Below, piece by piece: positions 9,201 to 61,270 of a stretch of 64,000 bases of DNA; the first letter of the stretch is position 1, and each line of letters begins with the position of its first letter. Source of the DNA: Podarcis erhardii (lineage: Eukaryota). Where the stretch lies: the NCBI GenBank assembly GCA_964252035.1, contig OZ176206.1; one strand, written 5' to 3'. The translations under genes and the position numbers were made by a program. The notes under the pieces were generated by a model that worked only from the letters and a program-made list of their open reading frames with translations, was not told where the DNA came from and did not search any database.

Positions 9201-10959
9201 GGGAAATCCACATTGGACCAGTGCTTTGTGATGAACTTTCTGCTATGTAAATACATCCTTCCCCAAAATGATGCATGCCAGCCTGCAGAGGGCTCACTCT
9301 CTCTAGGACAGGGATCAGCAATCTTTTTTAGCTGTAGGCCGGTCCACCGTCCCTCAGACCATGTGGTGGGCTGGACTATATTTTGAAAAAAAACCTGAAC
9401 CAATTCCTATGCCCCACAAATAACCCAGAGAGGCATTTTAAATAAAAGCACCCATTCTACTCATGTAAAAACACCAGGTAGGCCCCACAAATAACCCAGG
9501 GATGCATTTTAAATAAAAGGAGACATTCTACTCATGTAAAAACACTCTGATTCCCGGACCGTCCACAGGCCAGATTGGTCAGGCCGCTGGGCCTGGGGTT
9601 GCCTACCCCTGTTCTAGGAGGTTTGTTCAGGTGGCGTGTTGTCAACCAGTGTACCAATCACAGCTGCTCCTCTTTTCAGTGCTGGCCCCGGGTTTGGCCT
9701 GACACTGCTGCTTCCAGCTGTTTTCCTTTCCCTTTGATGGCGCTCTCTCTTTTCAGGATCATGACTTCTTCCAACATGTTGAGATGCATCTGAGGTCTGA
9801 ACACCCTCCTCTCTGTGGACGAGACCACCTCAGCTTCCGCTCCTATTACTTCCCAGTGAAGGTAGGCTGAGTTTGTGGGTCTCTGCTACGTGTCCATCAT
9901 AGGCTAGTAAGCACTTGAGCTCTGCTCATGGGTAAAAGTTGCCAATGTGAAGGCCAAATTTTCCCCTGCATTTTATGCTTGGTCAGAGCATCTGCTGAGG
10001 TTGCTGGAATGGCTTTTCCAGGACAGGATTCTGCTTGCTAAGAAGGGTAATCAGCAATGGGGCCTATATGTCTATGTGATTCTCTGACTTTTTCACCATC
10101 TGGGTGGTTTGTCTGAATGGACGTTTATCTTTTCTAAGTCATATGTATAGATTTCAAGCCCCGATTCCCTATTGCAGTTCTCCCTGGTGATGGTAGCATC
10201 CTGTTAGAACTGACCTAGGTATCAAGGTGGGTCTACTTTTTTCTTTGGAAACCATGTGTTTCTCTTGGGTCACCTGTACATCATGGATAGGGCAGCACTG
10301 TCCATTGTGTCAGAATTCGGTTTCTGCCCCCCCCCCTATGAATCTGCATTTCAGGAAATGCTTCTGTCACAATGAGGAGTCATGCAGCAGGTTATTTTTG
10401 CATTAGCATGGTTAAGTCTTCATTTCCAGACTTGCAGCATTAATAGTGTAGCTCTAAAGCTGCAAGTTCACCACATGCCAAGCCCTGGGGTGATCTTGAG
10501 CAAGATAGTTCAAGTTTGTTTGTTTTTTTGCTGGAGTTTTCTAGTTTTTTGTCCCGTCCCCCCCCCCCCCAATTCCATGGACTTGTGGACACCTTCATTT
10601 TTCACTTTTAGGAAAATGTCTGCTGAATACCTGTACTTTTTTAAAGAGAGAATTTGCTTTTTTTCATTCTGACTCTTGTGGAGAATCTTTGGGCCTCTTA
10701 GACAAGCCTCTTGTTCTGTGTGCTTTGGGTCTGCTTTCTGTGCTTGAGCCCATTCCCTCCTTCGTTCCATGGGCTACAGCTTCTAAAATAGCCCCCCACC
10801 CTTTCTTTCTCTTGCTAGAATGTCATTGATGGGGATCTGTGTGAGCAGTTCAACTCCATGGAGCCCAACAAGCAGAAGAACGTGTCTGAAGAGCTGGACA
10901 GGACCCCACCAGAGGTGTCCAAGAAGCTGGAGGACATCCGCACCCGCTATGCTTTCTGA
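99..10959 (+). CDS. SF3B3: Splicing factor 3B subunit 3 (SAP130), 3' part; join(99..242,846..968,1665..1819,2753..2927,3458..3663,4137..4293,5095..5220,6128..6340,7007..7105,8150..8293,9757..9861,10819..10959)
   Basis: 12 GT-AG exons splice in frame from [18 protein letters not shown] to [12 protein letters not shown]-stop, nearly identical to recalled human SF3B3. 5' exons lie upstream of the window. Confidence 0.98.
846..968 (+). CDS. SF3B3: SF3B3 coding exon 16
   Basis: cccag|AAC...GCG|gtgagt; 123 nt; [10 protein letters not shown]...MQGQEA. Confidence 0.97.
1396..1466 (-). mobile_element. CR1-type 3' tail (truncated LINE or CR1-tailed SINE)
   Basis: gagctggaagggaccctgtgggtcatctagtccaac...gcaatgcaggaatc is the reverse complement of the tails at 14810-14882 and 25484-25544. 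Confidence 0.65.
1665..1819 (+). CDS. SF3B3: SF3B3 coding exon 17
   Basis: ctccag|GTG...AG|gttcgt; 155 nt; VLAMSSRSW...ISTNTLR. Confidence 0.96.
2753..2927 (+). CDS. SF3B3: SF3B3 coding exon 18
   Basis: cacag|G ATT...GAG|gtaaca; 175 nt; ILALEKLG...RKQQMAE. Confidence 0.97.
3165..3430 (+). mobile_element. CR1 LINE 3' fragment
   Basis: Encodes [17 protein letters not shown] (CR1 ORF2 end), followed by a CR1 3'UTR (ggccactgtgagaacaggatgctg...tggcctgaaccagcagg). Confidence 0.75.
3458..3663 (+). CDS. SF3B3: SF3B3 coding exon 19
   Basis: ttgcag|GAA...AG|gtaagg; 206 nt; [10 protein letters not shown]...QNEAAF. Confidence 0.97.
4137..4293 (+). CDS. SF3B3: SF3B3 coding exon 20
   Basis: ctacag|T GTG...AAG|gtgaga; 157 nt; VAVCRF...LEFLHK. 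Confidence 0.97.
5095..5220 (+). CDS. SF3B3: SF3B3 coding exon 21
   Basis: ttcag|ACC...AAG|gtattt; 126 nt; [10 protein letters not shown]...RKCENK. Confidence 0.97.
5669..5780. mobile_element. Palindromic hAT-type MITE, degenerate
   Basis: ccctccaaatgttttggactacaactc...gatgggatttgtagtcccaaacatctggcggg, an internal inverted repeat; same family as 30937-31072. Confidence 0.7.
6128..6340 (+). CDS. SF3B3: SF3B3 coding exon 22
   Basis: cccag|CAC...GTG|gtgagt; 213 nt; [10 protein letters not shown]...KFGNICV. Confidence 0.97.
7007..7105 (+). CDS. SF3B3: SF3B3 coding exon 23
   Basis: ctgtag|GTG...AAG|gtaact; 99 nt; [10 protein letters not shown]...NGASQK (absent from the ORF track). Confidence 0.97.
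8150..8293 (+). CDS. SF3B3: SF3B3 coding exon 24
   Basis: tttcag|GCA...GAG|gtagga; 144 nt; [10 protein letters not shown]...PFTSHE. Confidence 0.97.
8790..9257 (+). mobile_element. Non-LTR retrotransposon reverse transcriptase N-terminal fragment, decayed
   Basis: [14 protein letters not shown] / frameshift / [61 protein letters not shown]...[14 protein letters not shown]; two stops and one frameshift. Confidence 0.85.
9309..9611. mobile_element. hAT (Charlie-like) MITE with internal ~65-bp duplication
   Basis: Ends CAGGGATCAGCAATC / GGTTGCCTACCCCTG; 8-bp TSD CTCTAGGA / TTCTAGGA; direct repeat ~9410-9473 vs ~9481-9545. Confidence 0.85.
9757..9861 (+). CDS. SF3B3: SF3B3 coding exon 25
   Basis: tttcag|GAT...AAG|gtaggc; 105 nt; [10 protein letters not shown]...YYFPVK. 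Confidence 0.97.
10819..10959 (+). CDS. SF3B3: SF3B3 last coding exon 26
   Basis: gctag|AAT...TTC TGA; [10 protein letters not shown]...RTRYAF-stop. Confidence 0.97.
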   Translation, partial: NVIDGDLCEQFNSMEPNKQKNVSEELDRTPPEVSKKLEDIRTRYAF

Positions 10960-11493
10960 GAGGCGCCTTTTCAGGGACGTGGCTGGGATTCCTGTTCCAA
11001 AGATGTTTTGAAGGGTATGAGCTTTTTTGGCCAGTTGCTCCCACTTTGGTACTCTTGTTTTCTTCCAGCGACGTGAAAGCCCAACCGTGTCATCAACCTG
11101 TTCTGTCCATGCTGTTCCAGGAGTCAGTCAGGTTCTCCCAAGTGGCGAGGCCTCCCCTTTCAGGTGTGTTTCTGGCTCCACCCTTTTTACAGACAGTTTG
11201 GGTGCTGCACCCACTACCAACCTGCCCTTGGACAAGGCCCTGGTGCCCTTTCCTTGTCAAGTGAGCTAGCTAGATGAAGTCCCCTTTTCTGAGTTGGTAA
11301 GATATGAGCACAGGGACGTTAGGGCTCCTCCTCTTCCATTGGCCAGTGTCTGGGAAGCCTTGTGGGCGTGGCTGGTGTAATTTTTCCATCCTGCAGTTTT
11401 TATCTCTGTGTTTGTAAATAGAGTCTTGTACCAAGTTAGCCTTTTGTCTGCTGAAGAGATGGCCTGTGTGATTCTGGCCATAGATTTTTCGTT

Positions 11494-11499
11494 AATAAA
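11494..11499 (+). terminator. SF3B3 polyadenylation signal
   Basis: First AATAAA after the stop codon (~535 nt 3'UTR); ATTAAA follows at 11513-11518. Confidence 0.75.
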
Positions 11500-13239
11500 A
11501 CCCAGCATCTGGATTAAAGGTTGGCTGACAAACCTGTTTGGTGACTTCTCTCATGAATTTTACCTGCTCCTGGGGACATGAGCTAGGGAGGAGCTCTGCC
11601 AATGGCACATTAAATTCATGGGAGGATCAATCTTGTCATCCATTTTAAAATGCACTTCTTGCCCTTTTGGCTGCAGAGGAAAGCCACATTTCCCTGCACT
11701 TGCAGTGTCTAGTATTAGGCTCTGTATTTCTCTAGAGATCTTACTCTCCCCTACCCTACCCCTTCAGAGAAGATAAGTTGCTGTTATGTTTACTTTCCTC
11801 AAAAGCAAACCTTTTGCACTCCCTCCCTCCGAGCCATTCTTAGGGCTGCATTACATGTGAATGACAGATCTCTTTGTTTCTATGGTGGGCTGACTACTTG
11901 TTTTAAATGTAATATAGGGGTTTGATTCATCCGAGTCAGCCTGGCCCAATAGTCAGGGATAATGGTAGCTGTTTGCAAATATTTGGAGGGCACAGGTTCC
12001 TGACCTCTGGAGGACAGTGCAGGTGTCTATGGAACTTGTGACTGGCTGCAGCTCCTAAACACAGATACTTGCTTGAAGAGATACAAATGCCCTTCAGATA
12101 TTACGGGGACCAGATGTTCAGTTAAAAATGTGCTGGCTGCTGAGAGATCAGTGTCTGGTTTTAATAGTCATGAGCTCACCTTTAGTTGAGGTCCGGCTAG
12201 AAATACAGTGGAACTGGCAGCACTGCCCCTTGGTGGAATGGGCACTTGCCGGATCAGGCTACAGAGAACTTATGAGCAGTAGTTTATTTAAGCCCGAAGC
12301 CAGGTGATTTCAGATCTAGAAATTGGGCCAGGCTTTCTGGGCCTTTTTCAAAAGTTTCCTGGTGCTTCGGGTTGCTTTTGTTTCAAATGTCTTCACTGAA
12401 CAATTACTTTAAAGGACCATTTCTCCTTCCATGTATGGATGTGGGAGTTCTGGATTGGATATCATCCATTTCAGAAGTAGAACTAAGCAAATTCTCTTGC
12501 CAGCTGAAAATCTCTCTTTCGGCTAGGCTCTGACATGCTATGTCAAACTGCCACACTGGACCTTCTCTGGCTCCAAGAAAAGGAGAGCCCATCCCATCAG
12601 AAGGGAGCCAGTAGCCAGTGAGGGATTGCGGAAAAGGGAGTAATCAGTGTCTGGTTGGGAAGTCTCTTGCCCTCTTAGACAAGGCCAGAGTGGAGCAGTG
12701 TGTAGCCTTTGAGGACTGCTGCTGCCTCACTAAGGTTGGGGCTGGTGGAGAGGCCTAACACAGCCCAGCCTTGAAATGGTTCAGTGATTAGGGGTGGGGA
12801 TTGATGTGAAGGGCAACTGTCAGTGACAAAGACTGTGGTAAAGCTTGCTGTGGGGAAGAACTATCTTCTATGCTGCTATAGTGGAAGCTACAGAAATAAT
12901 ACCCCTCAGACTTCACCCCCATTACTTCTCCACATACACAAGCAGGCACACTTGGATACTAAGCAGCTCTTTAGATTCTATGGGCATGGTAATGCTCGTT
13001 TCTTGCTACAAGGTGTTGGAAATATGCAAATGGCTGTGAGAAGAGGGTTGGGGATTGATGCACTGGCTGGTACTGAAATCAGCAAGGTCCAGCTCCTTTC
13101 TCCTAGTCCAGGGGCTGGGGCTTTAGAGCAACAGCATTAGAAAAAGGCAGGCCCCAGAAGGCTAAAAAACAACAACACATGCTTATTGCTTTCCATGTGA
13201 GAAGATACAGAGAGACGCAGCTATTGATTGCTACTTCCA

Positions 13240-13385
13240 CTGTTGGAGACAGTGTGCTTCTGAATACCAGTTGCTGGGAATCACATGAGTTATATTGTGC
13301 TCTCCCTTTGAGTTTCCTACAGGCATCTGGTTTGTCTCTGCCAGAGTGGGATGGGTCTTTGCTACAATCCAGCAGGCTCTTGTGC
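13240..13385 (+). mobile_element. Degenerate CR1 3' fragment
   Basis: gtgcttctgaataccagttgctgggaatc...ttcctacaggcatctgg...atccagcaggctctt resembles 3290-3425. Confidence 0.55.
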
Positions 13386-13705
13386 TCGTCTGAAATACAC
13401 CTTAAGACATCTCTCTTAAGAACCCCTACTAGGCTAGAACTATAGAAGCTGGTGCTTTGTTTTAAAAAAAATACACTTACCTTTCGATTTCTGTAACCAT
13501 AAATTCAGAATTGGAATGGCTGGGACAAATGTGTGTTAGCATTTGTGTTGTGATTCCAGGAGGGTTACAGGTAGGGAAACCACCTGTGGATGTTGTGTGC
13601 CTGGCCTGAAGAAACAACTGCTTTCTTCCTCTTATGCGTAGGAGAGTAAGAATGGGTATCCCCATGGGGTGGGAGGAACCAATTTGCGTTAATTACAGTA
13701 CAACT

Positions 13706-13711
13706 TTTATT
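13706..13711 (-). terminator. Probable MTSS2 polyadenylation signal
   Basis: First minus-strand AATAAA I found downstream of the MTSS2 stop; preceded on the minus strand by U-rich UTR-like sequence (13720-14000). Confidence 0.6.
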
Positions 13712-14744
13712 AATACTGGAATCTTCACAGTGCATTCGTTACTTGTAGCAGTGACTATTTTAAATGAAGGGAGAGGATAATTAACTTTAAGAATGAAAGA
13801 GGGTGGGTGGGTAAGGCCAGGGCTGCTAGCAAAGGGGGGGGGGTAGGGAAAATAAATTAGAAAAAAAGAACAAGTTAACAGCACCAGAATAGTTAACATC
13901 AGTTGAGAGAGACATTTTAAAGGGTTTTTTTCCTCTGTACAAAAAAATAAAAATAAAAAGCAAAATGCAAACATTTCTCACGCATTGTCACTGTTGTCAT
14001 TTCTGGCCATGACAGGGAGGAGGGGGGCACCCACAGGAAGGTTGGTTGGTTAGAAACTAAACTGTTATTACTACGACAGTATAAGAGTTAAGGAGGCTAC
14101 AACGTGACACCCACGCAAGCGCACATAAGACGTCTGGGCTGTGGGGAGGGTGGAGGGGACTGCTGTGGCTCTATGTACAACAACGACAACACCAGGCCCT
14201 GCTGTGCCTTGCAGGAACTAAGGATGGGGAGATGGGGAGGATCCAGCAAGAGGGAGCAGGCGCAGTTGTGCTTTCTCAGAGGCTTCTAGGCTCCCCAGCC
14301 CTTGCAAGGGGCCTTGAGTTGGCTGGTTTGTATTCACCACCGCTGTGCTTTGCTTGTGCCTCACCACACAGCACTCAATGCTGTCCACAGCTGTGCTCTC
14401 TCTCTAATAGAAAGGGTTGTTGACCACCATGCTGCTGCTATGAGAAATGTGGTGGCATCTCTCTTGAATAATTGTCACAAGCCCATCTTTCATTTTTTTC
14501 TTTGCATGGGTAAGCTCTGTACTCGAATGCCTGGCCTGTCCAAAGACAAAGGAAGCCCCTAATGTCTGGCATGGGCTCTGCCTCCCCCACTTAGCCACCC
14601 CATATGTGCTACATCTGTGCTGTTCAGTGATCCTTGGATACTCAACAATCCCACGAGAGGAAAGCAAGACATGCTCATTCTTGAGCCCAACAAACACAAA
14701 AGGTGGAGGTTATGCAGCACGGGCCGTTTAATGGACCCTCATTT

Positions 14745-14882
14745 GTTGACGAAGCTTGATCTGTAAAGCATGAGACTCTTAACCCAGGGCCAGGCCCCAT
14801 GTTGGACAAAAGATTTCTGTATTGCAAAGGGTTGGACTGGATGACCCTCATTGTTCCTTCCAACTCGACAATTCTCTGATTC
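14745..14882 (+). mobile_element. tRNA-derived SINE with CR1-type tail
   Basis: tRNA-Lys-like head remnant (agcatgagactcttaac...ccccatgttgg) joined to a CR1 tail ending attctctgatt. Confidence 0.65.
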
Positions 14883-15989
14883 CTTCCTAGTCAAAGCACA
14901 GGGAAAGGCGTCTCCCTCTTTCCCCCTCACTTTAGACCACCTTAATTCCCAGCCACTGACTTTCCCCATCACTTTCTCTTTCTTTCAAGACTGTCCCCTT
15001 TCCCAACAACACTTTCCATTTGCCAACAGAGCCGATTTCTAGACTTTCTGGGACAATATCAGGGTGAGCACAAGGTAGATCCAAGTCTCTTGCACTCTCC
15101 AGATCTGGGTATAAGATTACGTAACTAATATAAATAAACTCAATGAATTTATCCAAACCCTTAAGTTGTTTCTGCGGGGCAAATTCTTCTGTTCCAAATT
15201 TGGGGGGGCAGGTGGAAGTAAATGAAACAGCTTAAAAAGTTGATAGGCACTATTTGTATTTATGTTCCTTCTGACTACCTGGCTTGCGTGCCCTAAATTC
15301 CAGCCCTGCTGAACTCTTAACTCCCATCAGGCCCAGAAACCGGCCTAGCCCATGGTCAGCATTGATGGGAGTCTTAATAACATTGGAAGGTGAAAAGTTA
15401 TCCATCCCTGGCCTAAAACAGTGAGAAATGTGGATATTCTTACAGCAGCTGCATGGCCCAAGCTGGAGCTTCTGGCTGGGAGCTGCAATCCAACTCATGC
15501 TCCTTCAGCTCCAAGCACAAAGGAAGAAGCTGTGCTGAATATTCATTTGGTTATAGATCTGGAGGCCAAAACCAGAACAAGGGAGCTGGTCTGTTTCTGT
15601 AAATCCCCTCTGCCCCCATTTTTAAAGCCTGCTTGTGGCAATTCTTTCCTCACTTTCTGCTGGGACTCTAATTTCATGAGCAGGTCAGGGTGAATCGGGG
15701 AATCGTACCATGAATGCGATGTGGTTGACCATATAGCAGATCTGGCTAAGCAGCAGCAACTTCGCCAAAGGTAAACGAACCAACCAAGAGGGTTGGTTCA
15801 GCTATTTCCCTCTCTGCAGATACTTTAAACCCCTTTCAAAGTATCCACCCAATATTGACAAAATTGGGCCCCTTTTGATGCTGTTAGAAGAGGCACCCTG
15901 CCACACACTCACAGGCTTAGTCATAACCATACCCATACTTGGCCAAAACAGGCTCACATTGGAAAAGGCAGAGGACACTGCCCCAGACC

Positions 15990-16125
15990 CAGCACTCCGC
16001 CTAACACTGCTTGGCAGCAGCCTCCCACAACAAAGATCTTTCCTATTCTTATCTGGAGATGCCAACAGTTGAACCTGGGACCTTCTGCATGCCAAGCAGG
16101 TGCTCTACCACTCTGCTACAGCCTT
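15990..16125 (-). mobile_element. tRNA-derived SINE
   Basis: ggagatgcc...ttgaacctgggaccttctgcatgccaagcaggtgctctaccact is a reverse-complemented tRNA head with A/B-box-like motifs; body resembles 46155-46220. Confidence 0.65.
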
Positions 16126-16839
16126 TCCAGTGACACCAGAACCTGTGAGCATCAGTTTAACAACCTTTGGCCTTGCCAGATGGTTGTAGGAGAATTCAAG
16201 AGCAGACACCCTTGGTCTTTGCACACACCCTGCTTTCAAAACCCTCTAAGGCCCTCAATTACCAAAGTCCTCCACTACCATCCACAAAAATACTTCTTTT
16301 GCTCCTATATCCACTTAGCTACAGCTATTCCGGAGCAACAGCCATCCACCTTCACCTTTCCATCACTACCAATTCTGCTCCCTCCCACCCAACTTCAAGG
16401 GAGAACCATGGCCACTGCTCTTATCAAAAGGTTCAAGCCCAGTCCTGAAGTGGCACTGAGGGCAGATCAACAGCAGCCCAACCCTCGGCCTCAGATTACA
16501 GAGCTCCTACCCCACTTGGGATGAGAGCACAATCCTCTTCCTGAATATAACCAACCTGCCCACTCTGCTCCCAGTAGAGCCACGGAGGAAACGGAGGCCA
16601 ATAAGTCTGTGGCTGTGACTCAACCTCTTGTTGGGGGGGGTTGGGCCCTCCTGCCTGGTGACATGCCTGCAGGTTGTTCACTCCCTGCCCCTTGCACCCT
16701 CTCCTCCAGCTGCGCATTTGGGATCCACCTGGGAACACGAGAGGCTTCCGGGATTGTTCACGGGGGTGTTAACTGCTGCTTGTAAAGTCTTTCTTGAAGT
16801 AGCTGATACAAACAGATGGCAAACAGAAAATAACTGGAA

Positions 16840-16840
<1 letters not shown>

Positions 16841-16877
<37 letters not shown>
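16841..16877. repeat. (GACA)n microsatellite
   Basis: gacagacaaacagacagacagacagacagacagacag. Confidence 0.9.
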
Positions 16878-17435
16878 AGAGCTGTGAAGGGAGGATTCAG
16901 CACAGGACTAACAGTGCATTTTTTTTGTCCGGAGGAGGTGGGTGCTCTCTAGGAACGGCAGCCTCCATTTCTTTGCCATGTGCAAGTGTGTCGGGGCGTG
17001 TGTGTGTAGTTTATACTAAGAACACTGTAGTTGCTAGATCCAGTTCAGGTTTTCACTCCTCCCTGACAATCATGGAGCAAGGGAATGGCCTCCCTCCTTG
17101 TGGCGGCAGCAGCAGCAGCAACCGGTCTCTCTGCAGGCCAGGATGAAGGAAGGTGCAGGAGGGGAAAGGAAACCTGGGCAGGGCAGCAGATGGAAAAACA
17201 ATGTGTATAAAAGAGGCTCCAAAACCAGTTCAGTGCCAGGCTGTGCCTGTGCAGGTTTGTTAGCAAAGGCGTATAGATTAGTCTCCTTTATATCTAGACT
17301 CTGACACGATCTCCATAAAGTGGCTTTGCCTTTTGTGGTTCGTTTACTTCTCTTCCATTTCCCCTGGTTTAGTCCTGACTCTGGTTGCTCTCCAGCCACC
17401 GGGTGGGCACTGAGCAGGCGCTGGGGAAGAGTCCA

Positions 17436-18199
17436 TCACAAAAACCGGGGCGCCGACCTGTCATTGGTGATGGTCCTGCGAAGGCGCACCCCACGCCGGA
17501 TGGCCACCAGCATGTCTTCCGCCGGAGGGTCGCTGGAGGCCGCCGGGGGAGGAGTGGGTGTCTCTTCCCCGGGACCGAGGGCAGAGACCCCCGTGGGGAA
17601 GGGAAACTGGCCCTCGCCAAGGGCATGGGCACTGGCTACCAGCTCCCCAATCTTCTCCACAAGGCTGTGCCGGTTGGCTGCCAGCTGCTGCTCCTCCTCC
17701 TCTGTGGAGAGGTGCTTCCCGGCATACACAGAGATCTCCATCACGTTGCTGCCCCAGGCGGTGTTTGGCAGGCTCAGCCTCTTGGGCGAGGCTTTGGCAA
17801 AGTCCATGGCGCTTGGTGAGGCATCGTCAGTGTAGAACACACATTCCTCGCTGCCCACCCGGGTGGGGCCGGTGTACCCAGGGGAGTCAGGCACTGTTGG
17901 CGTCTTGACAGGGACAATGGGGGGTCTGATGGGAATGGGGCCGGCGTTGGAGAGGGTTCGGCGTACTGTGGGCTTGGTGGAAGGTGTGCGGCGGATGGTG
18001 GCCACCCCTGGCGTGGCGCCGGTGGGCAGGGCAGTGCCGGTGGGCAGGCCAGCAGTAGAAGCAGGCCGCTTGGTCTGGATCATGCGCCGGTAATTCTGGG
18101 CGATGTTGCTGTTGCGAGGGATAGTCGAGGATTTGTCGAATTCGCTCTGGTTCTCCCCTTCCATGTCGCCGTTCACGGAATAGCAGTCGTAATCTGAGC
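17436..18199 (-). CDS. MTSS2: MTSS2 last coding exon 15 (Pro-rich region + WH2)
   Basis: ccacag|GC TCA GAT TAC...CTG TGA; 764 nt; SDYDCYSVNG...NDRSAPRFL-stop. Confidence 0.97.
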
Positions 18200-21100
18200 C
18201 TGTGGAGGCGACAGATGGACAGGGTGGGTGTCAGCATTCTCAGCTGGCAGGTGCAGCACAGCCAAGCAGCCACTGCTGGACTCCATGCGCAACACTCTCC
18301 ACTATATGAGATCTTTCATACGTATATATTTTGATTTTGTTAATATATATAACCTGTGTCTATTTTAGTTGTAAGCTGCCTTGAATCCCATGGGTGTGGG
18401 GGGGAGGCAAGATATAGATAAATGTAATAACCATGTATGCCACCCTAAAAAAAATTACCACATTAAGTAAAACGCCACCCCACCCCTTCCCTGGGTGCCA
18501 ATAAGCCCATTGGCAGAGATACCTTGCGAGGGGATGGTGTCCTCAGAGCAGGAAGGAGTGGTGGTTTGTGTGCTGTAGCCACTGGAGTACTGCAGGGAGT
18601 CCCGGCTACTCTTCTGGTGCTCAAGACTCAGGCCTCGGGTCAGCACCATGGCCAGGTCACTTGCGGCTGGGGACACCTCCTCCCCATGCTGGTGGAGAAA
18701 CAAAATGGGGTGGGAAGTGAGCGGTGTGATGAGCTGGTCTCAAAGCAAATGGCACCCTGAGCTGTAGGAGATGGCACCATGTGTGTGCCTGGGCCAGGCC
18801 ACCTGCACCCAAAGGTCAGAAAACATGAATGGAAAGCAAGTGGAGATGGGGAGATAGGAGAATGATCAAGTTATCTCATTCCCCAAAACTATGTTGGCCG
18901 TGAACACAACACCCCTAGTGGGCAAGCAGCTGCTGACATGAGGGTGGTTAGCCTGGATCTCTCCCAGGCTAACATGTGTGCCCCAATTCCACATGCACCC
19001 CATGAGTCCCTGCTCTGCTCAAGACAGGATGTGCAAATAATGCCCATTTCTTTTGTGTGTACTGGGGGGGGGGGCTGAAGTGAGGAGGCTTTGTGGGGCA
19101 GAGGCAAGGTGGAAGTAGGAGGAGGAAAGTGGCGCCTAAAGGCAGTGGCCAGCCCTCCCTCCCTCCCTCCCATGGCTATTCCCCAGTGACTCACATACAG
19201 CAGCTGGTGAGAGTAGGCATCATGTCTGCCAGGGTCACTCAAGCAGGTCCCTCATCAAACATATGAAGTATAAGCAACAGACATGCATCATTCAATTCCT
19301 CCAGGGCTCCACAGCCCCATCAGGGCAAAGGGCTACACAGGAAGCTGCTGGCATGCGATGGCATGCTGGGGGTGGCATTTTTTCACGATTCATATGAGCA
19401 AAACCCATCAACTGCAAAACACTTCTCCGAGAGAACTTCCTCTGCTGCCCTGAAATTCCCTTCTGCACTCAGCTCAAGGATGCCAGTTGCTATTTGGGTA
19501 AATCTCCTTCTGGAACAAGATATACAGAGGAGGCCTGGGTCTCCTCCTCCAGGGAGTTGCCTCCTAGCTAAGGTCTGGGACAAGTAAGTGCTCCATCACC
19601 TGGGTACCAAACCTATTCCAAGTTCCTGTCCCCCCGGTCTCCCATTTTGACACTGAAGCTGGCTATACCTTGGCAGCAATGGAGGCCGGGGACATGCGGG
19701 GCCTGGAGCCTTCCTCCAAGCTGATTCCTGGGTATACCAGGCTGGTGGAGCCCAGCTCAGCTTCACGGAGATGCTCTACGCGGTCCTTCCTTCGCTGCAG
19801 TGTGCTTGCCACCGGCTGTTCATAGAGGCTAGCCTTGGACCAATCCTGCAAAATCCAAGAGGAGATGGGTAGGACGGCACAGCTGGGGCCCCAACATCGG
19901 GCACAGCAGTGCAAAGTCAGGTGGGTATGGAATAGGGCAGAAATGGGAGATGAGACTGGATGGAGAGGGATTGGGCAAGGGGGTGGGGAGAGAGGAATTG
20001 GCAAAAGGGCCACCCCAGGGCAAAGAGCAGGGGTTGTGGCAATCACAAAATGGCTCTGCCACCATTTTGCTCTGTTGGGCTGGTGACGGAGAAATCCCCT
20101 CTTGGCTTAAAAAGGGTTTCAACAAAGACAGGAAAGGTGGAGGCGCCAGGCCAGGAGGGTGCCTGCTTCCTTTTAAAAGTGTGGGCTGCTTCCCCAAGAG
20201 CTTGAAGCAGCTGACAGTCATGATACCTCCAACAATATGTGTCCCCCATCCCACTGGAATCCCAATTCTCTCACTCTCCTCAAACACATTTTCTGGAAAG
20301 TCAGGTGAATGCATCTTCCCTCTTACAGAAAGTGCTATATAAATATTGAGTGTTCAAAACACAGCACATTCAGTTCTGCACGATCCATACAATGGTCCTG
20401 AAAGGCAGACTGCTGTCTAAAAGAACTCAGTGAGCTCATGGCTGACCTGAGAATGGAAGGACTTCCAGGCAGGGGCTGTTCTTAGCCCCCCCACCACCAC
20501 CACTTCACTCCACTCACACCAAACCCTACATGGTGTTTGTTTATGGGAAGCAGTTCCTGCCCCAACTCAGAGAGATGGCAGCACAGGGACATTGCAGAGA
20601 CTTTGGGGGGGGGGCAGGTGGGTCAGCTGAGGGGAAATAGTTCATATTCTGCCATCCCAAAGCTGTCCTGATGCAGGCTTCCTGTGTTCAGGAAGAAGGA
20701 AGCAGCACTTCCTGTTTCCAGAGCACTTTGATGTGCTCACAATGCCAGTGTGCAAGAGGAAAGAACGACTGCTTCAGACAGCCTGATGGGTTTGATCTGG
20801 GGCCACATGGGAGCCTTTGCTACCTGCACCTAAAAATGCTGGGGTGGGAGCCTGGCTGGGTTCAACCATTGAGCATATTAAATGATGCAGAAAACCCCCC
20901 AAACAGAACGGAACTTGTGCAGAGCAGAGGCTCTTGCTCCTGAGTGACCTCTGCAGCATCACCTCCATTGCTTTCCAGAGGGGAATCCCTAGGCTGCTGC
21001 TGGAAGATTAGGCTTGGAGCTACATGTTTCCAGAGCCAACAGAGCCACAGAAGGCTCCTGTTCCAGCTCTGGAGCAGCTGACTCCCCTGGTCAAGATCTC

Positions 21101-30100: not shown

Positions 30101-33100
30101 GCTTTGGCCTAAGGGGGAAGGAATGGTTATTCCAAGCTGCACCAATCATTTTAACCAGGCCTTTGGTCCCTAACTGAAAGCACCTGGGGCCCTTAAGTGC
30201 CCAGACAAAATGGTGGCACTCTGCTGCAGGTGGAAAATGTGGTCTCCCTCTGAAGGAGACCTAGCCATCTTCCAGAACAGCCTTCCCTGAAGCCGGTGCC
30301 CTCCAGTTGTTTTGGGTTACATAAGCCATCCCATAAGCCAGTGGTATCCAAACTTTTTAAAAAGAGGGCCAGATTTGATGAAGTGAAGGGCCATGGGGGC
30401 TGACCAAAGGGCCAAGCAATGTTGTTGACCTTTTTTTAGGATTGAAGTTGTTGAGGGGTTTTTTAGGCTTTTACCCCAGGAAATAAACTGACGCAGGGGC
30501 TGGATTAAACCGACCAGCGGGCCACATTAGGTCCCCGAATTGGACTTTGGACATGCCTGCCATAAGCAATACCAAGGAGGATTTCCTCTAGAGAAGGCTG
30601 AGGCTGATGGGAGTTGTGGTCCAAAACACCAGGTTGGAGAAGATGGCCCCAGAGTGAGAGACTGAGCCAGTCTGGATCTGTGAGAATTCTAGCTGTTTTT
30701 CCATTGTGTGTTCAACTGATGAAACCAAAGTGTATGTGCTTTGAATGTGCCCTTTGATTTCCCCCTTTTCAAAGTGGCAGTAGGGCATATGAAGCAGCCT
30801 TGCACTGAGGCAGACCCCTGCCCAGAGGAGTGGCTCTGCAGGGTCTCAGGCAGGTGGAGAGGGTAGGACCCCTTCTTCCTCCTTCACATTGCTTGCTGCT
30901 ACCAAATTCTTTAAACTGGGATTAAACCCAATACATCAGGCACAGGCAAACTTGACCCTCCAGATGTTTTGAGACTGCAATTCTCATCATCCCTGACCAC
31001 TGGTCCTGTTAGCTAGGGATGGTGGGAGTTGTAGTCCCAAAACATCTGGAGGGCTGAGTTTGCCTATGCCTGCAATACATTCTGTAAAATAACCCAGTTT
31101 TTTGCAGCCCCAGGAAGGTGGGGCCTGAATGCAACTCTTCCAAATCAAACTAAGGGTTTTCATGTATGCTAGGCTTCTTTTAAGACACACAGAGCACTGT
31201 CTTTAGAAAACAGCTTCACAACAACCTTGTAAGGGAGCTTAGGCTGAAAGGTAGGGACTTTCCAAGGCCAGGAAAGGCCCAAGGTTGGAATGGTCAAACT
31301 ATAGATACAGTGGTGCCTCGCAAGACGAAATTAATTCGTTCCGCGAGTTGCTTCGTCTTGCGATTTTTTCGTCTTGCGGAGCGCGGATTGCCCGGGTATT
31401 AACGGTTTTACGAAAAAGGAAGCAAACCCGCAAGACGTTTTCGTCTTGCGAAGCAAGCCCATAGGGAAATTCGTCTTGCGAAGCACCTCGAAAAACGGAA
31501 AACCCTTTCGTCTAGCGAGCTTTTCGTCTTGCGAGGCATTCGTCTTGCGGGGCACCACTGTAAATAAACCCAGCACACACCACATATTTTGACCTAAAAG
31601 GTCTCATAAGCCTCAGCCAGCAAGGCCAAGGGTTGGGGGTAGGAGTTCTACTCCACCAACATCTGGGAGGCACCAGGTAAGTGGGGAGTGTGGGGGGGGA
31701 GAGACTACTCTAAACAGAGGCAAGGCAAGAGCCCCATGGATTTTGGCATCTCAGGTGCTTAGCTAGTTTGTGGATGGGCTAGTCTGGATGTTGGCGTAGT
31801 AGGGGAGGCACACACCCATTTCCCATGGAGTCTTGAATGCCAGCAGGCCAAAATAAGATGGCTTTGGAACAAACTCCCAAGTCTCCAATTTGGCCTGAGG
31901 TAAGCTGCTCTTCTTCAGCCTCAGTCTGGCCACCTGCAACATGGGGGGCAGTGATGCTGGCCTGCCTTACAGGGTCATTGCAAGGTTCACTGAGAATAAT
32001 GAAGCAACTTTGAACTTAGCATTTCTGTTCTTGCCATGTGATCTGTCAGCACCTTACACCTCAGGTTCCTGTGTTCATCACAGAGCAAGGACCACCTCCT
32101 CTCTGCCTCCAGCAAAGCTGGGCTGAGCCTCAGTCGGCCCCATCAGCTTAAGCTGCTCCCAACCCTCAATGCACCACTTGCGTCAGCATGGCCTCTGGAG
32201 GTTTCATTTCATTTCAAGCCCAACCGAAACAGAGTGGAGGGAGGGAGGGAGGAAAGGATTACAGGTAGTGAAGCCAAGAGCGTGGAGGAAGGGTGAGGGA
32301 TGCCTGGATGAAGCTGAGATGGCAACATTTGACTTACCAAGTAGCTCTACAGGAAGGATGTGGAAAGGAGGGAAGAGAAAAGAGAGAGGGAGGAAGAGAG
32401 AAAGAATGTGTGAAAGACAGGCTGATGTATAGAGCCATCTTCTCACCCGGAACAGGACCCCACAGAACCACCACCCAACTCAGCCACATCACCAGGTACA
32501 CAACTGCCCTCCCGCCATAAAATGACAGCAAGGGACAGCTGCATCTGGTCAGGTCTTCTCCACTGGCACAAGGAGCAAAAGTGGGAGCCACAGGACTCTG
32601 GTAACCTCCCCCAGGTGGGGGGTAATGGCAGGTCCAGGGATGGGGTGGGGATTCCCCAAGGCAGAATGCAAATGCCCCAGACCCAAGCCAAACGCCACAG
32701 GTCCCCAATCCACCTTGCATGGAGCAGCCAAACAGGAGGAGGAAGGCACAGAGACATTTGCACCCTGCACCTTGTCTTCCCAAGGAGTCACTGGTGGCCA
32801 CGTGCACACGCAACATCTGGTTTGGGCCTCAGAGGGTCTGCTGCAGGAGCCAGGAAGATCCCTCTCAATACCTAGAAGGACTGAGAATGGTATGAGACGC
32901 CACACTGAGAACACCAACACAGTTCTCTTCCCATGACAGAGTGTGTGCATAAAGGGGAGGGAGAGGCACTTTGATAGGCAATTATCCCCGAGCCCCCCCC
33001 CCTTTGCAGTCAGCACCAGCATACACACATGGTAACTTCAAGGAGCAACAACCTGGATCAACACACTGGCCTCATTTTAGGGCAATAAGAACTTAGCAAG

Positions 33101-60809: not shown

Positions 60810-61270
60810 AAATGAAGATGTCGGCTCAGTGTGCAGCAGCTGTGAAAGAGGCAAATTCCATGCTAGGGATCATTAGGAAAGGAATTTAAAATAAAACTGC
60901 CAATACCATAATGCTGTTATACAAATCTATGCTGCAACTGCTCTTAGAATATTGTGTACAGTCCAGGTCCTCTCACCCCAAAAAAGGATATTGTAGACCT
61001 GGAAAATGTTTAGAAAAAGGCAGCCAAAAGGATCAAGGTGAAGAAAGGCTGCAGCATTTGAGGCTTTTTAGTTTAGAGAAAAAAGATATACGAAGCAACA
61101 AGACAGAAGTTTATAATAGCTATGCTGTACCTTCACTATCAGAGGCAGTATGCATCTGAATACCAGTTGCTGGAGGTGAGAGTGCTGATGAGCTCTGGTC
61201 CAGCTTGAAGGCTCCCCATAAGGTCATTTGACTGGCCACTACTGGATGCTGAACTAAATGGGCCGTTGGC
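60810..61270 (+). mobile_element. CR1 3' fragment
   Basis: QCAAAVKEANSMLGIIRKG...IMLLYKSMLQLLLEYCVQ...ERLQHLRLFSLEK, then CR1 3'UTR. Confidence 0.8.

What the first reader, a model, noticed from the sequence alone, without database searches (positions are those of the whole stretch)
11520..13690. IL34 is not recognisable at its syntenic position between SF3B3 and MTSS2
Seen: the SF3B3 polyA signal (+, 11494) and the first MTSS2 polyA signal (-, 13706) leave only ~2.2 kb. That gap has no CpG island, and reading by eye I found none of the IL34 motifs (LQYMKHxFP, ANVTRL, LRYLW, RPKALLDNC) here or on the + strand of the MTSS2 3'UTR. Established: human 16q22 order is SF3B3(+), IL34(+), MTSS2(-); I recall this being conserved in other tetrapods but have not verified it. 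Inference: IL34, the second CSF1R ligand needed for Langerhans cells and part of the microglia in mouse, was deleted or moved in this lizard lineage. I do not know whether this has been reported.
Basis: partly seen in the sequence, partly recalled or inferred. Interest (0 to 1): 0.7.

Follow-up and report, generated by a model that had tools for sequence, protein, structure and literature searches.

The report
IL34 missing between SF3B3 and MTSS2
In this lizard window the immune signal gene IL34 is absent from its usual place between SF3B3 and MTSS2, but this loss was reported for lizards and snakes in 2020 and shown across 261 squamate assemblies in 2026.

Summary
Observation confirmed; interpretation supported; not new.

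- **Flanking genes.** SF3B3 (+) ends with a stop codon at 10957-10959 and an AATAAA at 11494. An MTSS-family gene (-) has its last coding exon at 17439-18230 and a TTTATT at 13706.
- **Size of the interval.** That leaves 2.2 kb between polyA signals and 6.5 kb between stop codons.
- **No IL34 signal.** Pfam's IL34 family did not match any ORF of 25 aa or more on either strand of 11.3-17.9 kb. It also matched no ORF of 60 aa or more elsewhere in the window. The same scan picked up single exons of both flanking genes.
- **Assembly.** Contigs of public runs tile the interval at flat depth. They break only at three short high-copy repeats, and a relative about 2% diverged has the same spacer.
- **Literature.** Pinheiro et al. 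(eLife 2020) reported IL34 lost in Squamata. Salve, Sonal and Vijay (BMC Biol 2026) showed the SF3B3-MTSS2 segmental deletion across 261 squamate assemblies, with long reads spanning this locus in the common wall lizard.
- **Limit.** Absence from the whole genome was not testable here, because no IL34 sequence could be brought in by reference.

The parts
10819..10959 (+). Last coding exon of SF3B3 (approximate start), ending ...EDIRTRYAF and the stop codon at 10957-10959
   Evidence: Translation. Upstream exons match CPSF_A and human SF3B3.
10960..11520 (+). SF3B3 3'UTR with AATAAA at 11494 (ATTAAA at 11513)
   Evidence: A contig of the RNA-like run X16 covers 11401-11558.
11520..13690 (.). 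SF3B3-MTSS2 spacer where IL34 would be expected. It has no IL34 exon, no CpG island and no Rfam family.
   Evidence: Pfam scans of all ORFs of 25 aa or more on both strands, CpG and motif scans, Rfam. One contig of X1 and one of relative X4 cover 11401 to about 13270.
13232..13285 (.). Short high-copy interspersed-repeat fragment; short-read contigs break here
   Evidence: Depth about 6600 against about 9 beside it in X1, with many loose ends. There is one weak copy at 61128-61173.
13706..17438 (-). Putative long MTSS2 3'UTR, from the first letter after the last coding ORF down to the TTTATT at 13706
   Evidence: The ORF ends at 17439. RNA-like runs X16 and X17 cover 14300-16099 and 14817-16996. 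Transcript ends are not shown.
14794..14875 (.). Second short high-copy repeat fragment
   Evidence: Depth about 4000 in X1 and X4.
16050..16128 (-). Third high-copy fragment, tRNA-like (probably the head of a SINE)
   Evidence: Depth about 19000. Rfam tRNA scores 26.6 bits at 16054-16125(-), below the cut-off of 29.
17439..18230 (-). Last coding exon of the MTSS-family gene (MTSS2 by position), with a C-terminal WH2 motif
   Evidence: Pfam WH2, E 7.9e-6, residues 234-260 of the ORF.

Best explanation
The interval is a plain intergenic spacer left by an ancient deletion of IL34. SF3B3 (+) and MTSS2 (-) keep their ancestral convergent arrangement, but the IL34 gene that lies between them in other tetrapods is gone. 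What remains is about 2.2 kb of non-coding sequence evolving at about the rate of the neighbouring 3'UTR, with a repeat fragment, followed by a long MTSS2 3'UTR. According to published work the deletion is shared by squamates, so it predates this lizard's own lineage, and CSF1 is the only CSF1R ligand so far recognised in squamates. Shown here: the flank genes, the absence of any recognisable IL34 exon in the window, and the lack of signs of a collapsed assembly. Taken from the literature: absence from the rest of the genome and from other squamates. Inferred: a single ancestral deletion event, and compensation by CSF1.
For: Flank genes and their ends. Pfam IL34 does not appear at E<=10 among 177 ORFs of 25 aa or more covering both strands of 11.3-17.9 kb, nor at E<=1 among 394 ORFs of 60 aa or more in the rest of the window. 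The same scans find single exons of SF3B3 (down to 3.4e-10) and MTSS2 (1.1e-7 to 4.2e-20; WH2 7.9e-6), so exon-sized pieces of a conserved gene can be detected this way. There is no CpG island, no motif hit and no Rfam family. In reads, run X1 tiles 11401-16833 with 0 differences at a flat depth of 7-10. Relative X4, from another study, has one contig over 11401-13266 with about 1.8-2% differences. Differences in X16 are about 2-5% in the spacer and about 3-4% in the MTSS2 3'UTR, so the spacer shows no sign of constraint. The only joints are short-sided ones at repeats. Literature: PMC7717901 states IL34 is lost in Squamata. PMC13005343 reports the SF3B3-MTSS2 distance significantly reduced in squamates, long reads spanning the locus in Podarcis muralis and Naja naja, and no IL34 by BLASTn in assemblies or raw reads.
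Against: No true IL34 sequence could be used as a query, so the only IL34-specific test was Pfam's family model, with no positive control on real IL34 exons. IL34 evolves fast (about 40-50% identity to human in non-mammalian groups, PMC7717901), so old remnants would escape any such scan. Outside the core interval only ORFs of 60 aa or more were scanned. None of the contigs listed bridges the three repeats at 13.23-13.29, 14.80-14.88 and 16.05-16.13 kb with 31 letters on both sides, so continuity there rests on the assembly and on the published long reads. That the genome is a wall lizard comes only from unchecked notes of other agents. The published genome-wide negative rests largely on BLASTn and annotation.
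Confidence: 0.88

Rival explanations
1. IL34 survives elsewhere in the genome, moved and strongly diverged, so that annotation and BLASTn miss it.
For: IL34 shares only about 40-50% identity with human IL34 in non-mammalian groups (PMC7717901). PMC13005343 itself warns that fast-evolving immune genes may persist in diverged form, and it reports rearrangement of the locus in some vipers. Nothing outside this 64-kb window could be tested here.
Against: No IL34 is annotated in any squamate in RefSeq (PMC13005343) or in NCBI Gene and Ensembl (PMC7717901). BLASTn of 261 assemblies and raw reads, and transcriptome searches, were negative, and CSF1R shows relaxed or altered selection in squamates (PMC13005343). 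There is no hit in this window.
Confidence: 0.06
2. Assembly artefact: sequence holding IL34 is missing at a repeat-mediated false join inside 13.2-16.1 kb.
For: No listed contig of X1 or X4 bridges the repeats at 13232-13285, 14794-14875 and 16050-16128; neighbouring contigs overlap by only about 15-30 letters.
Against: Unique depth is flat at 7-10 on both sides, and contigs meet end to end exactly as in the assembly. Two of the three repeats lie inside the MTSS2 3'UTR, which the RNA-like runs cover on both sides. Long reads span the same locus in Podarcis muralis and Naja naja, and the short spacer is seen across squamates (PMC13005343).
Confidence: 0.03
3. A compact, unrecognisably diverged IL34 gene or pseudogene still sits in the 2.2-kb spacer.
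For: Run X16, probably RNA, covers the whole spacer at a depth like that of the UTRs. ORFs of 76-133 aa exist at 12077-12304, 12805-13137 and 13106-13504.
Against: None of these ORFs has a Pfam match to IL34 or any credible family. There are no spliced joints, and the one at 12772-12838 in X16 skips only 65 letters with a 29-letter side. There is no CpG island. Divergence between relatives is the same as in the 3'UTR. The two longest ORFs overlap the repeat fragment.
Confidence: 0.03

Closest known systems
Squamate-wide loss of IL34 by segmental deletion between SF3B3 and MTSS2 (Salve, Sonal & Vijay, BMC Biol 2026, PMC13005343; first noted by Pinheiro et al., eLife 2020, PMC7717901)
   Same: Same locus, same flanking genes in the same convergent order, same shrunken spacer, and no IL34 remnant. 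Their Fig. 6 shows this locus in the common wall lizard, in a 5-kb view spanned by long reads.
   Different: Nothing of substance. This report adds window-level detail: 2.2 kb between polyA signals, 6.5 kb between stop codons, repeat fragments, an 87-letter indel between relatives, and RNA-like coverage of the spacer.
The SF3B3-IL34-MTSS2-VAC14 block of other tetrapods (human 16q22)
   Same: SF3B3 on + and MTSS2 on - with facing 3' ends, as described in PMC13005343 and PMC7717901.
   Different: IL34 is missing and the spacer is only about 2 kb. No comparison genome could be read here.
Other squamate-wide immune gene deletions, such as the TCR gamma and delta loci (PMC11754216)
   Same: An immune gene conserved in other vertebrates is deleted in all squamates, with a presumed compensating relative.
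   Different: A different locus and a different pathway; listed only as context from an abstract.

Membership tests
IL34 gene (Pfam IL34 family) | Protein-coding exons that match the IL34 family profile | tested here: not met
   IL34 is not among the families listed at E<=10 for 177 ORFs of 25 aa or more in 11.3-17.9 kb, nor among the 25 most-matched families listed at E<=1 for 394 ORFs of 60 aa or more elsewhere.
   Zero matches in six frames of the whole window with 0-3 mismatches allowed. The motifs come from memory, so this is a weak test.
IL34 gene (Pfam IL34 family) | A spliced transcript on the + strand between SF3B3 and MTSS2 | tested here: not met
   No credible splice joints in four runs; the only joints are short-sided ones at repeats or small indels. 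Only contigs were available, so rare forms could be missed.
IL34 gene (Pfam IL34 family) | Match to IL34 of tuatara, turtle, chicken or frog by tblastn or HMM, in the window and genome-wide | not testable with these tools
   No IL34 sequence could be obtained by reference, and no squamate genome collection is on hand.
Published squamate IL34 segmental deletion | SF3B3 and MTSS2 adjacent, in conserved convergent orientation | tested here: met
   MTSS2 as opposed to MTSS1 is inferred from position only.
Published squamate IL34 segmental deletion | Strongly reduced SF3B3-MTSS2 distance | tested here: met
   2.2 kb between polyA signals and 6,479 bases between stop codons. The larger distance in non-squamates is taken from PMC13005343 and was not measured here.
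Published squamate IL34 segmental deletion | Assembly at the locus is sound | tested here: inconclusive
   Flat depth and error-free tiling by X1, and the same spacer in relative X4, but the three repeats are not bridged by any listed contig. Long-read proof comes from the paper, for P. muralis and N. naja.
Published squamate IL34 segmental deletion | The source is a squamate | not tested
   Organisms of the runs are coded. 'Wall lizard' or 'lacertid' comes from other agents' unchecked notes. A tRNA-like high-copy SINE fragment fits but is not specific.

The most novel reading that the evidence does not exclude
Squamates still make a second CSF1R ligand: either a relocated IL34 diverged beyond sequence recognition, or an unrelated four-helix protein that took over its role in microglia and Langerhans-type cells. 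The empty SF3B3-MTSS2 spacer would then mark a move or a replacement, not a functional loss.
Probability: 0.05. Interest if true: 0.6.

Novelty: already known. Interest (0 to 1): 0.12.

Why it matters
IL34 is one of the two ligands of CSF1R. A whole order of vertebrates living without it is a natural knockout of interest for macrophage biology. That point has already been made in print in 2020 and 2026, including for a wall lizard. This window therefore only adds an independent confirmation at one locus and some local detail.

Tried and rejected
No IL34 sequence was available by reference and I did not type one from memory.
- **The large protein searches** were not used. They need a query from the window, and none is IL34-like.
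- **A spliced protein model** was not built. Exons were searched one by one by reference and the joining step was left out.
- **Supplementary tables of PMC13005343** are not held as text, so per-species distances could not be read.
- **Rfam** on 10.9-17.5 kb gave only a sub-threshold tRNA-like match and a noise hit.
- **Self-comparison** of the interval against the window found one 46-letter repeat match.
- **Tandem repeats** between 11 and 33 kb: three small arrays, two in the interval's surroundings, (AGAC)n at 16840-16878 and an 18-mer at 18018-18052.
- **Earlier scan notes** hold nothing on IL34.
- **Collapsed repeat or gap**: rejected on flat depth.
- **IL34 hidden in introns of SF3B3 or MTSS2**: rejected only for ORFs of 60 aa or more.
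- **Literature check for a lizard IL34**: one search and one paper read (PMC5719456) turned up no claim of an IL34 in lizards.

Full report
**What is at the coordinates**

The window has no N.

On the + strand, stop-to-stop ORFs up to about 11 kb carry SF3B3 exons.
- ORF 6110-6406 matches human SF3B3 residues 983-1063 at E 1e-43.
- Other ORFs match Pfam CPSF_A and the RSE1/DDB1/CPSF1 second propeller.
- The last exon reads ...EDIRTRYAF, with the stop codon at 10957-10959.

On the - strand lies an MTSS-family gene.
- ORF 17439-18230 ends in a WH2 motif.
- IMD-domain exons lie at 25.3, 26.5, 34.0 and 34.3 kb, with one more between 37.7 and 52 kb.
- I call it MTSS2 from its position tail-to-tail with SF3B3. 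I did not test it against MTSS1.
- The first - strand polyA signal after the stop is TTTATT at 13706.

The interval is therefore 2.2 kb between polyA signals and 6,479 bases between the two stop codons.

**Is IL34 there?**

I scanned every stop-to-stop ORF of 25 aa or more on both strands of 11.3-17.9 kb (177 ORFs) against Pfam at E<=10. The IL34 family did not appear. I then scanned the 394 ORFs of 60 aa or more in the rest of the window at E<=1, again without IL34.

The same scans recovered single exons of SF3B3 and MTSS2, at E-values from 8e-6 down to 8e-25. Exon-sized pieces of a conserved gene are therefore visible to this procedure.

Other checks were also negative.
These motifs come from memory, so the test is weak.
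- No CpG island lies between 11.5 and 17.7 kb.
- Rfam finds only a sub-threshold tRNA-like match at 16054-16125.

**Is the assembly sound?**

One run-finding call and one read-laying run were available, and all four runs laid were contigs.
- **Run X1** holds all sampled words, so it may be the source sample. It tiles 11401-16833 with zero differences at a flat depth of 7-10. Its first contig continues leftward into SF3B3.
- **Run X4** is another organism from another study, about 2% diverged. It has one contig across 11401-13266.
- **Breaks.** Contigs break only at three short pieces whose depth is in the thousands: 13232-13285, 14794-14875 and 16050-16128. None of the listed contigs bridges them with 31 letters on both sides. 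My data therefore argue against a collapse but do not prove continuity at those three points.
- **Zero depth at 17201-17400** in all runs is most likely the tool's filter for human-like contigs, next to the conserved last MTSS2 exon.
- **Joints.** No spliced joints were seen. The joints listed are short-sided ones at the repeats, or small indels.

**Rate of change**

In run X16 (organism F) the spacer differs from the window by about 2-5%, and the MTSS2 3'UTR by about 3-4%. In X4 the figures are about 1.8-2.0% against 1.0-1.6%. The spacer shows no sign of constraint.

**Literature**

The loss is already in print.
- **Pinheiro et al. [quoted passage not shown]
- **Salve, Sonal and Vijay (BMC Biol 2026, PMC13005343)** analysed 261 squamate assemblies.
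  - They found COG4-SF3B3 and MTSS2-VAC14 flanking an empty site.
  - They showed a significantly reduced SF3B3-MTSS2 distance in squamates.
  - They recovered no IL34 by BLASTn from assemblies or raw reads.
  - They verified the locus with long reads in Naja naja and in the common wall lizard (chr8:39,120,000-39,125,000).
  - They rank IL34 as their strongest case of gene loss, and they report altered selection on CSF1R.
  - They say that most of their 53 unretrieved genes are present in tuatara, which points to losses specific to squamates. I did not see IL34 named in that passage.
- Notes by other agents on this same genome call it a wall lizard or lacertid. These notes are unchecked. If they are right, this is the same genus, or even the same species, as the published figure.
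- One literature search and one paper read turned up no claim of an IL34 in lizards.

**Explanation**

The interval is an ordinary intergenic spacer left by an ancient deletion that removed IL34, while SF3B3 and MTSS2 kept their order and orientation.
- Shown here: the flanking genes, no recognisable IL34 in 64 kb, and no sign of collapse.
- Taken from the papers: absence from the whole genome and from other squamates.
- Inferred: one ancestral event, and compensation by CSF1.

Three rivals each keep a few percent.
- A moved and diverged IL34 elsewhere in the genome.
- A false join at one of the unbridged repeats.
- An unrecognisable remnant in the spacer.

**Limits**

It could not be run, because no IL34 sequence could be obtained by reference and I did not type one from memory. 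There was no positive control on true IL34 exons. IL34 evolves fast, and remnants some 250 million years old would not be expected to show in any case.

**Verdict**

The finding is already known, so interest is low.

Noticed in passing
window 11749: Two related organisms (runs X4 and X16) carry about 87 extra letters at this point of the spacer, so it is an indel relative to the window.
   Followed up: no
window 11401-13624: Run X16 is small (127 M letters) and only guessed to be RNA. It covers the whole 'intergenic' spacer at depth 46-160, similar to the SF3B3 3'UTR (118) and the MTSS2 3'UTR (141). Repeats are only about 10 times deeper there, against 700-2000 times in the genomic runs, so it looks like RNA. 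The spacer may be transcribed, either as a longer MTSS2 3'UTR using the - strand signals at 12283 or 12160, or as SF3B3 read-through. Contigs show neither strand nor ends, and run X17 does not cover it.
   Followed up: partly
window 16050-16128 (also 13232-13285 and 14794-14875): Three very short fragments of high-copy interspersed repeats (depth 4000-19000 in genomic runs). The one at 16054-16125(-) is tRNA-like (26.6 bits, below Rfam's cut-off), which suggests the head of a SINE.
   Followed up: partly
window ~31305-31562: A CpG-rich patch (o/e 0.86) inside an MTSS2 intron is a roughly 250-base element. Its terminal inverted repeats read CAGTGGTGCCTCGCAAGACGAA ... TTCGTCTTGCGGGGCACCACTG, it has internal copies of TTCGTCTTGCGA, and TA flanks both ends. 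It looks like a miniature DNA transposon, not a promoter.
   Followed up: partly
window 17201-17400: Depth is zero in all four runs beside the conserved last MTSS2 exon. This is probably the read tool's filter for human-like contigs rather than missing sequence.
   Followed up: no
window 16840-16878: An (AGAC)n microsatellite in the MTSS2 3'UTR. Contigs of X1 and X17 end just before it.
   Followed up: no
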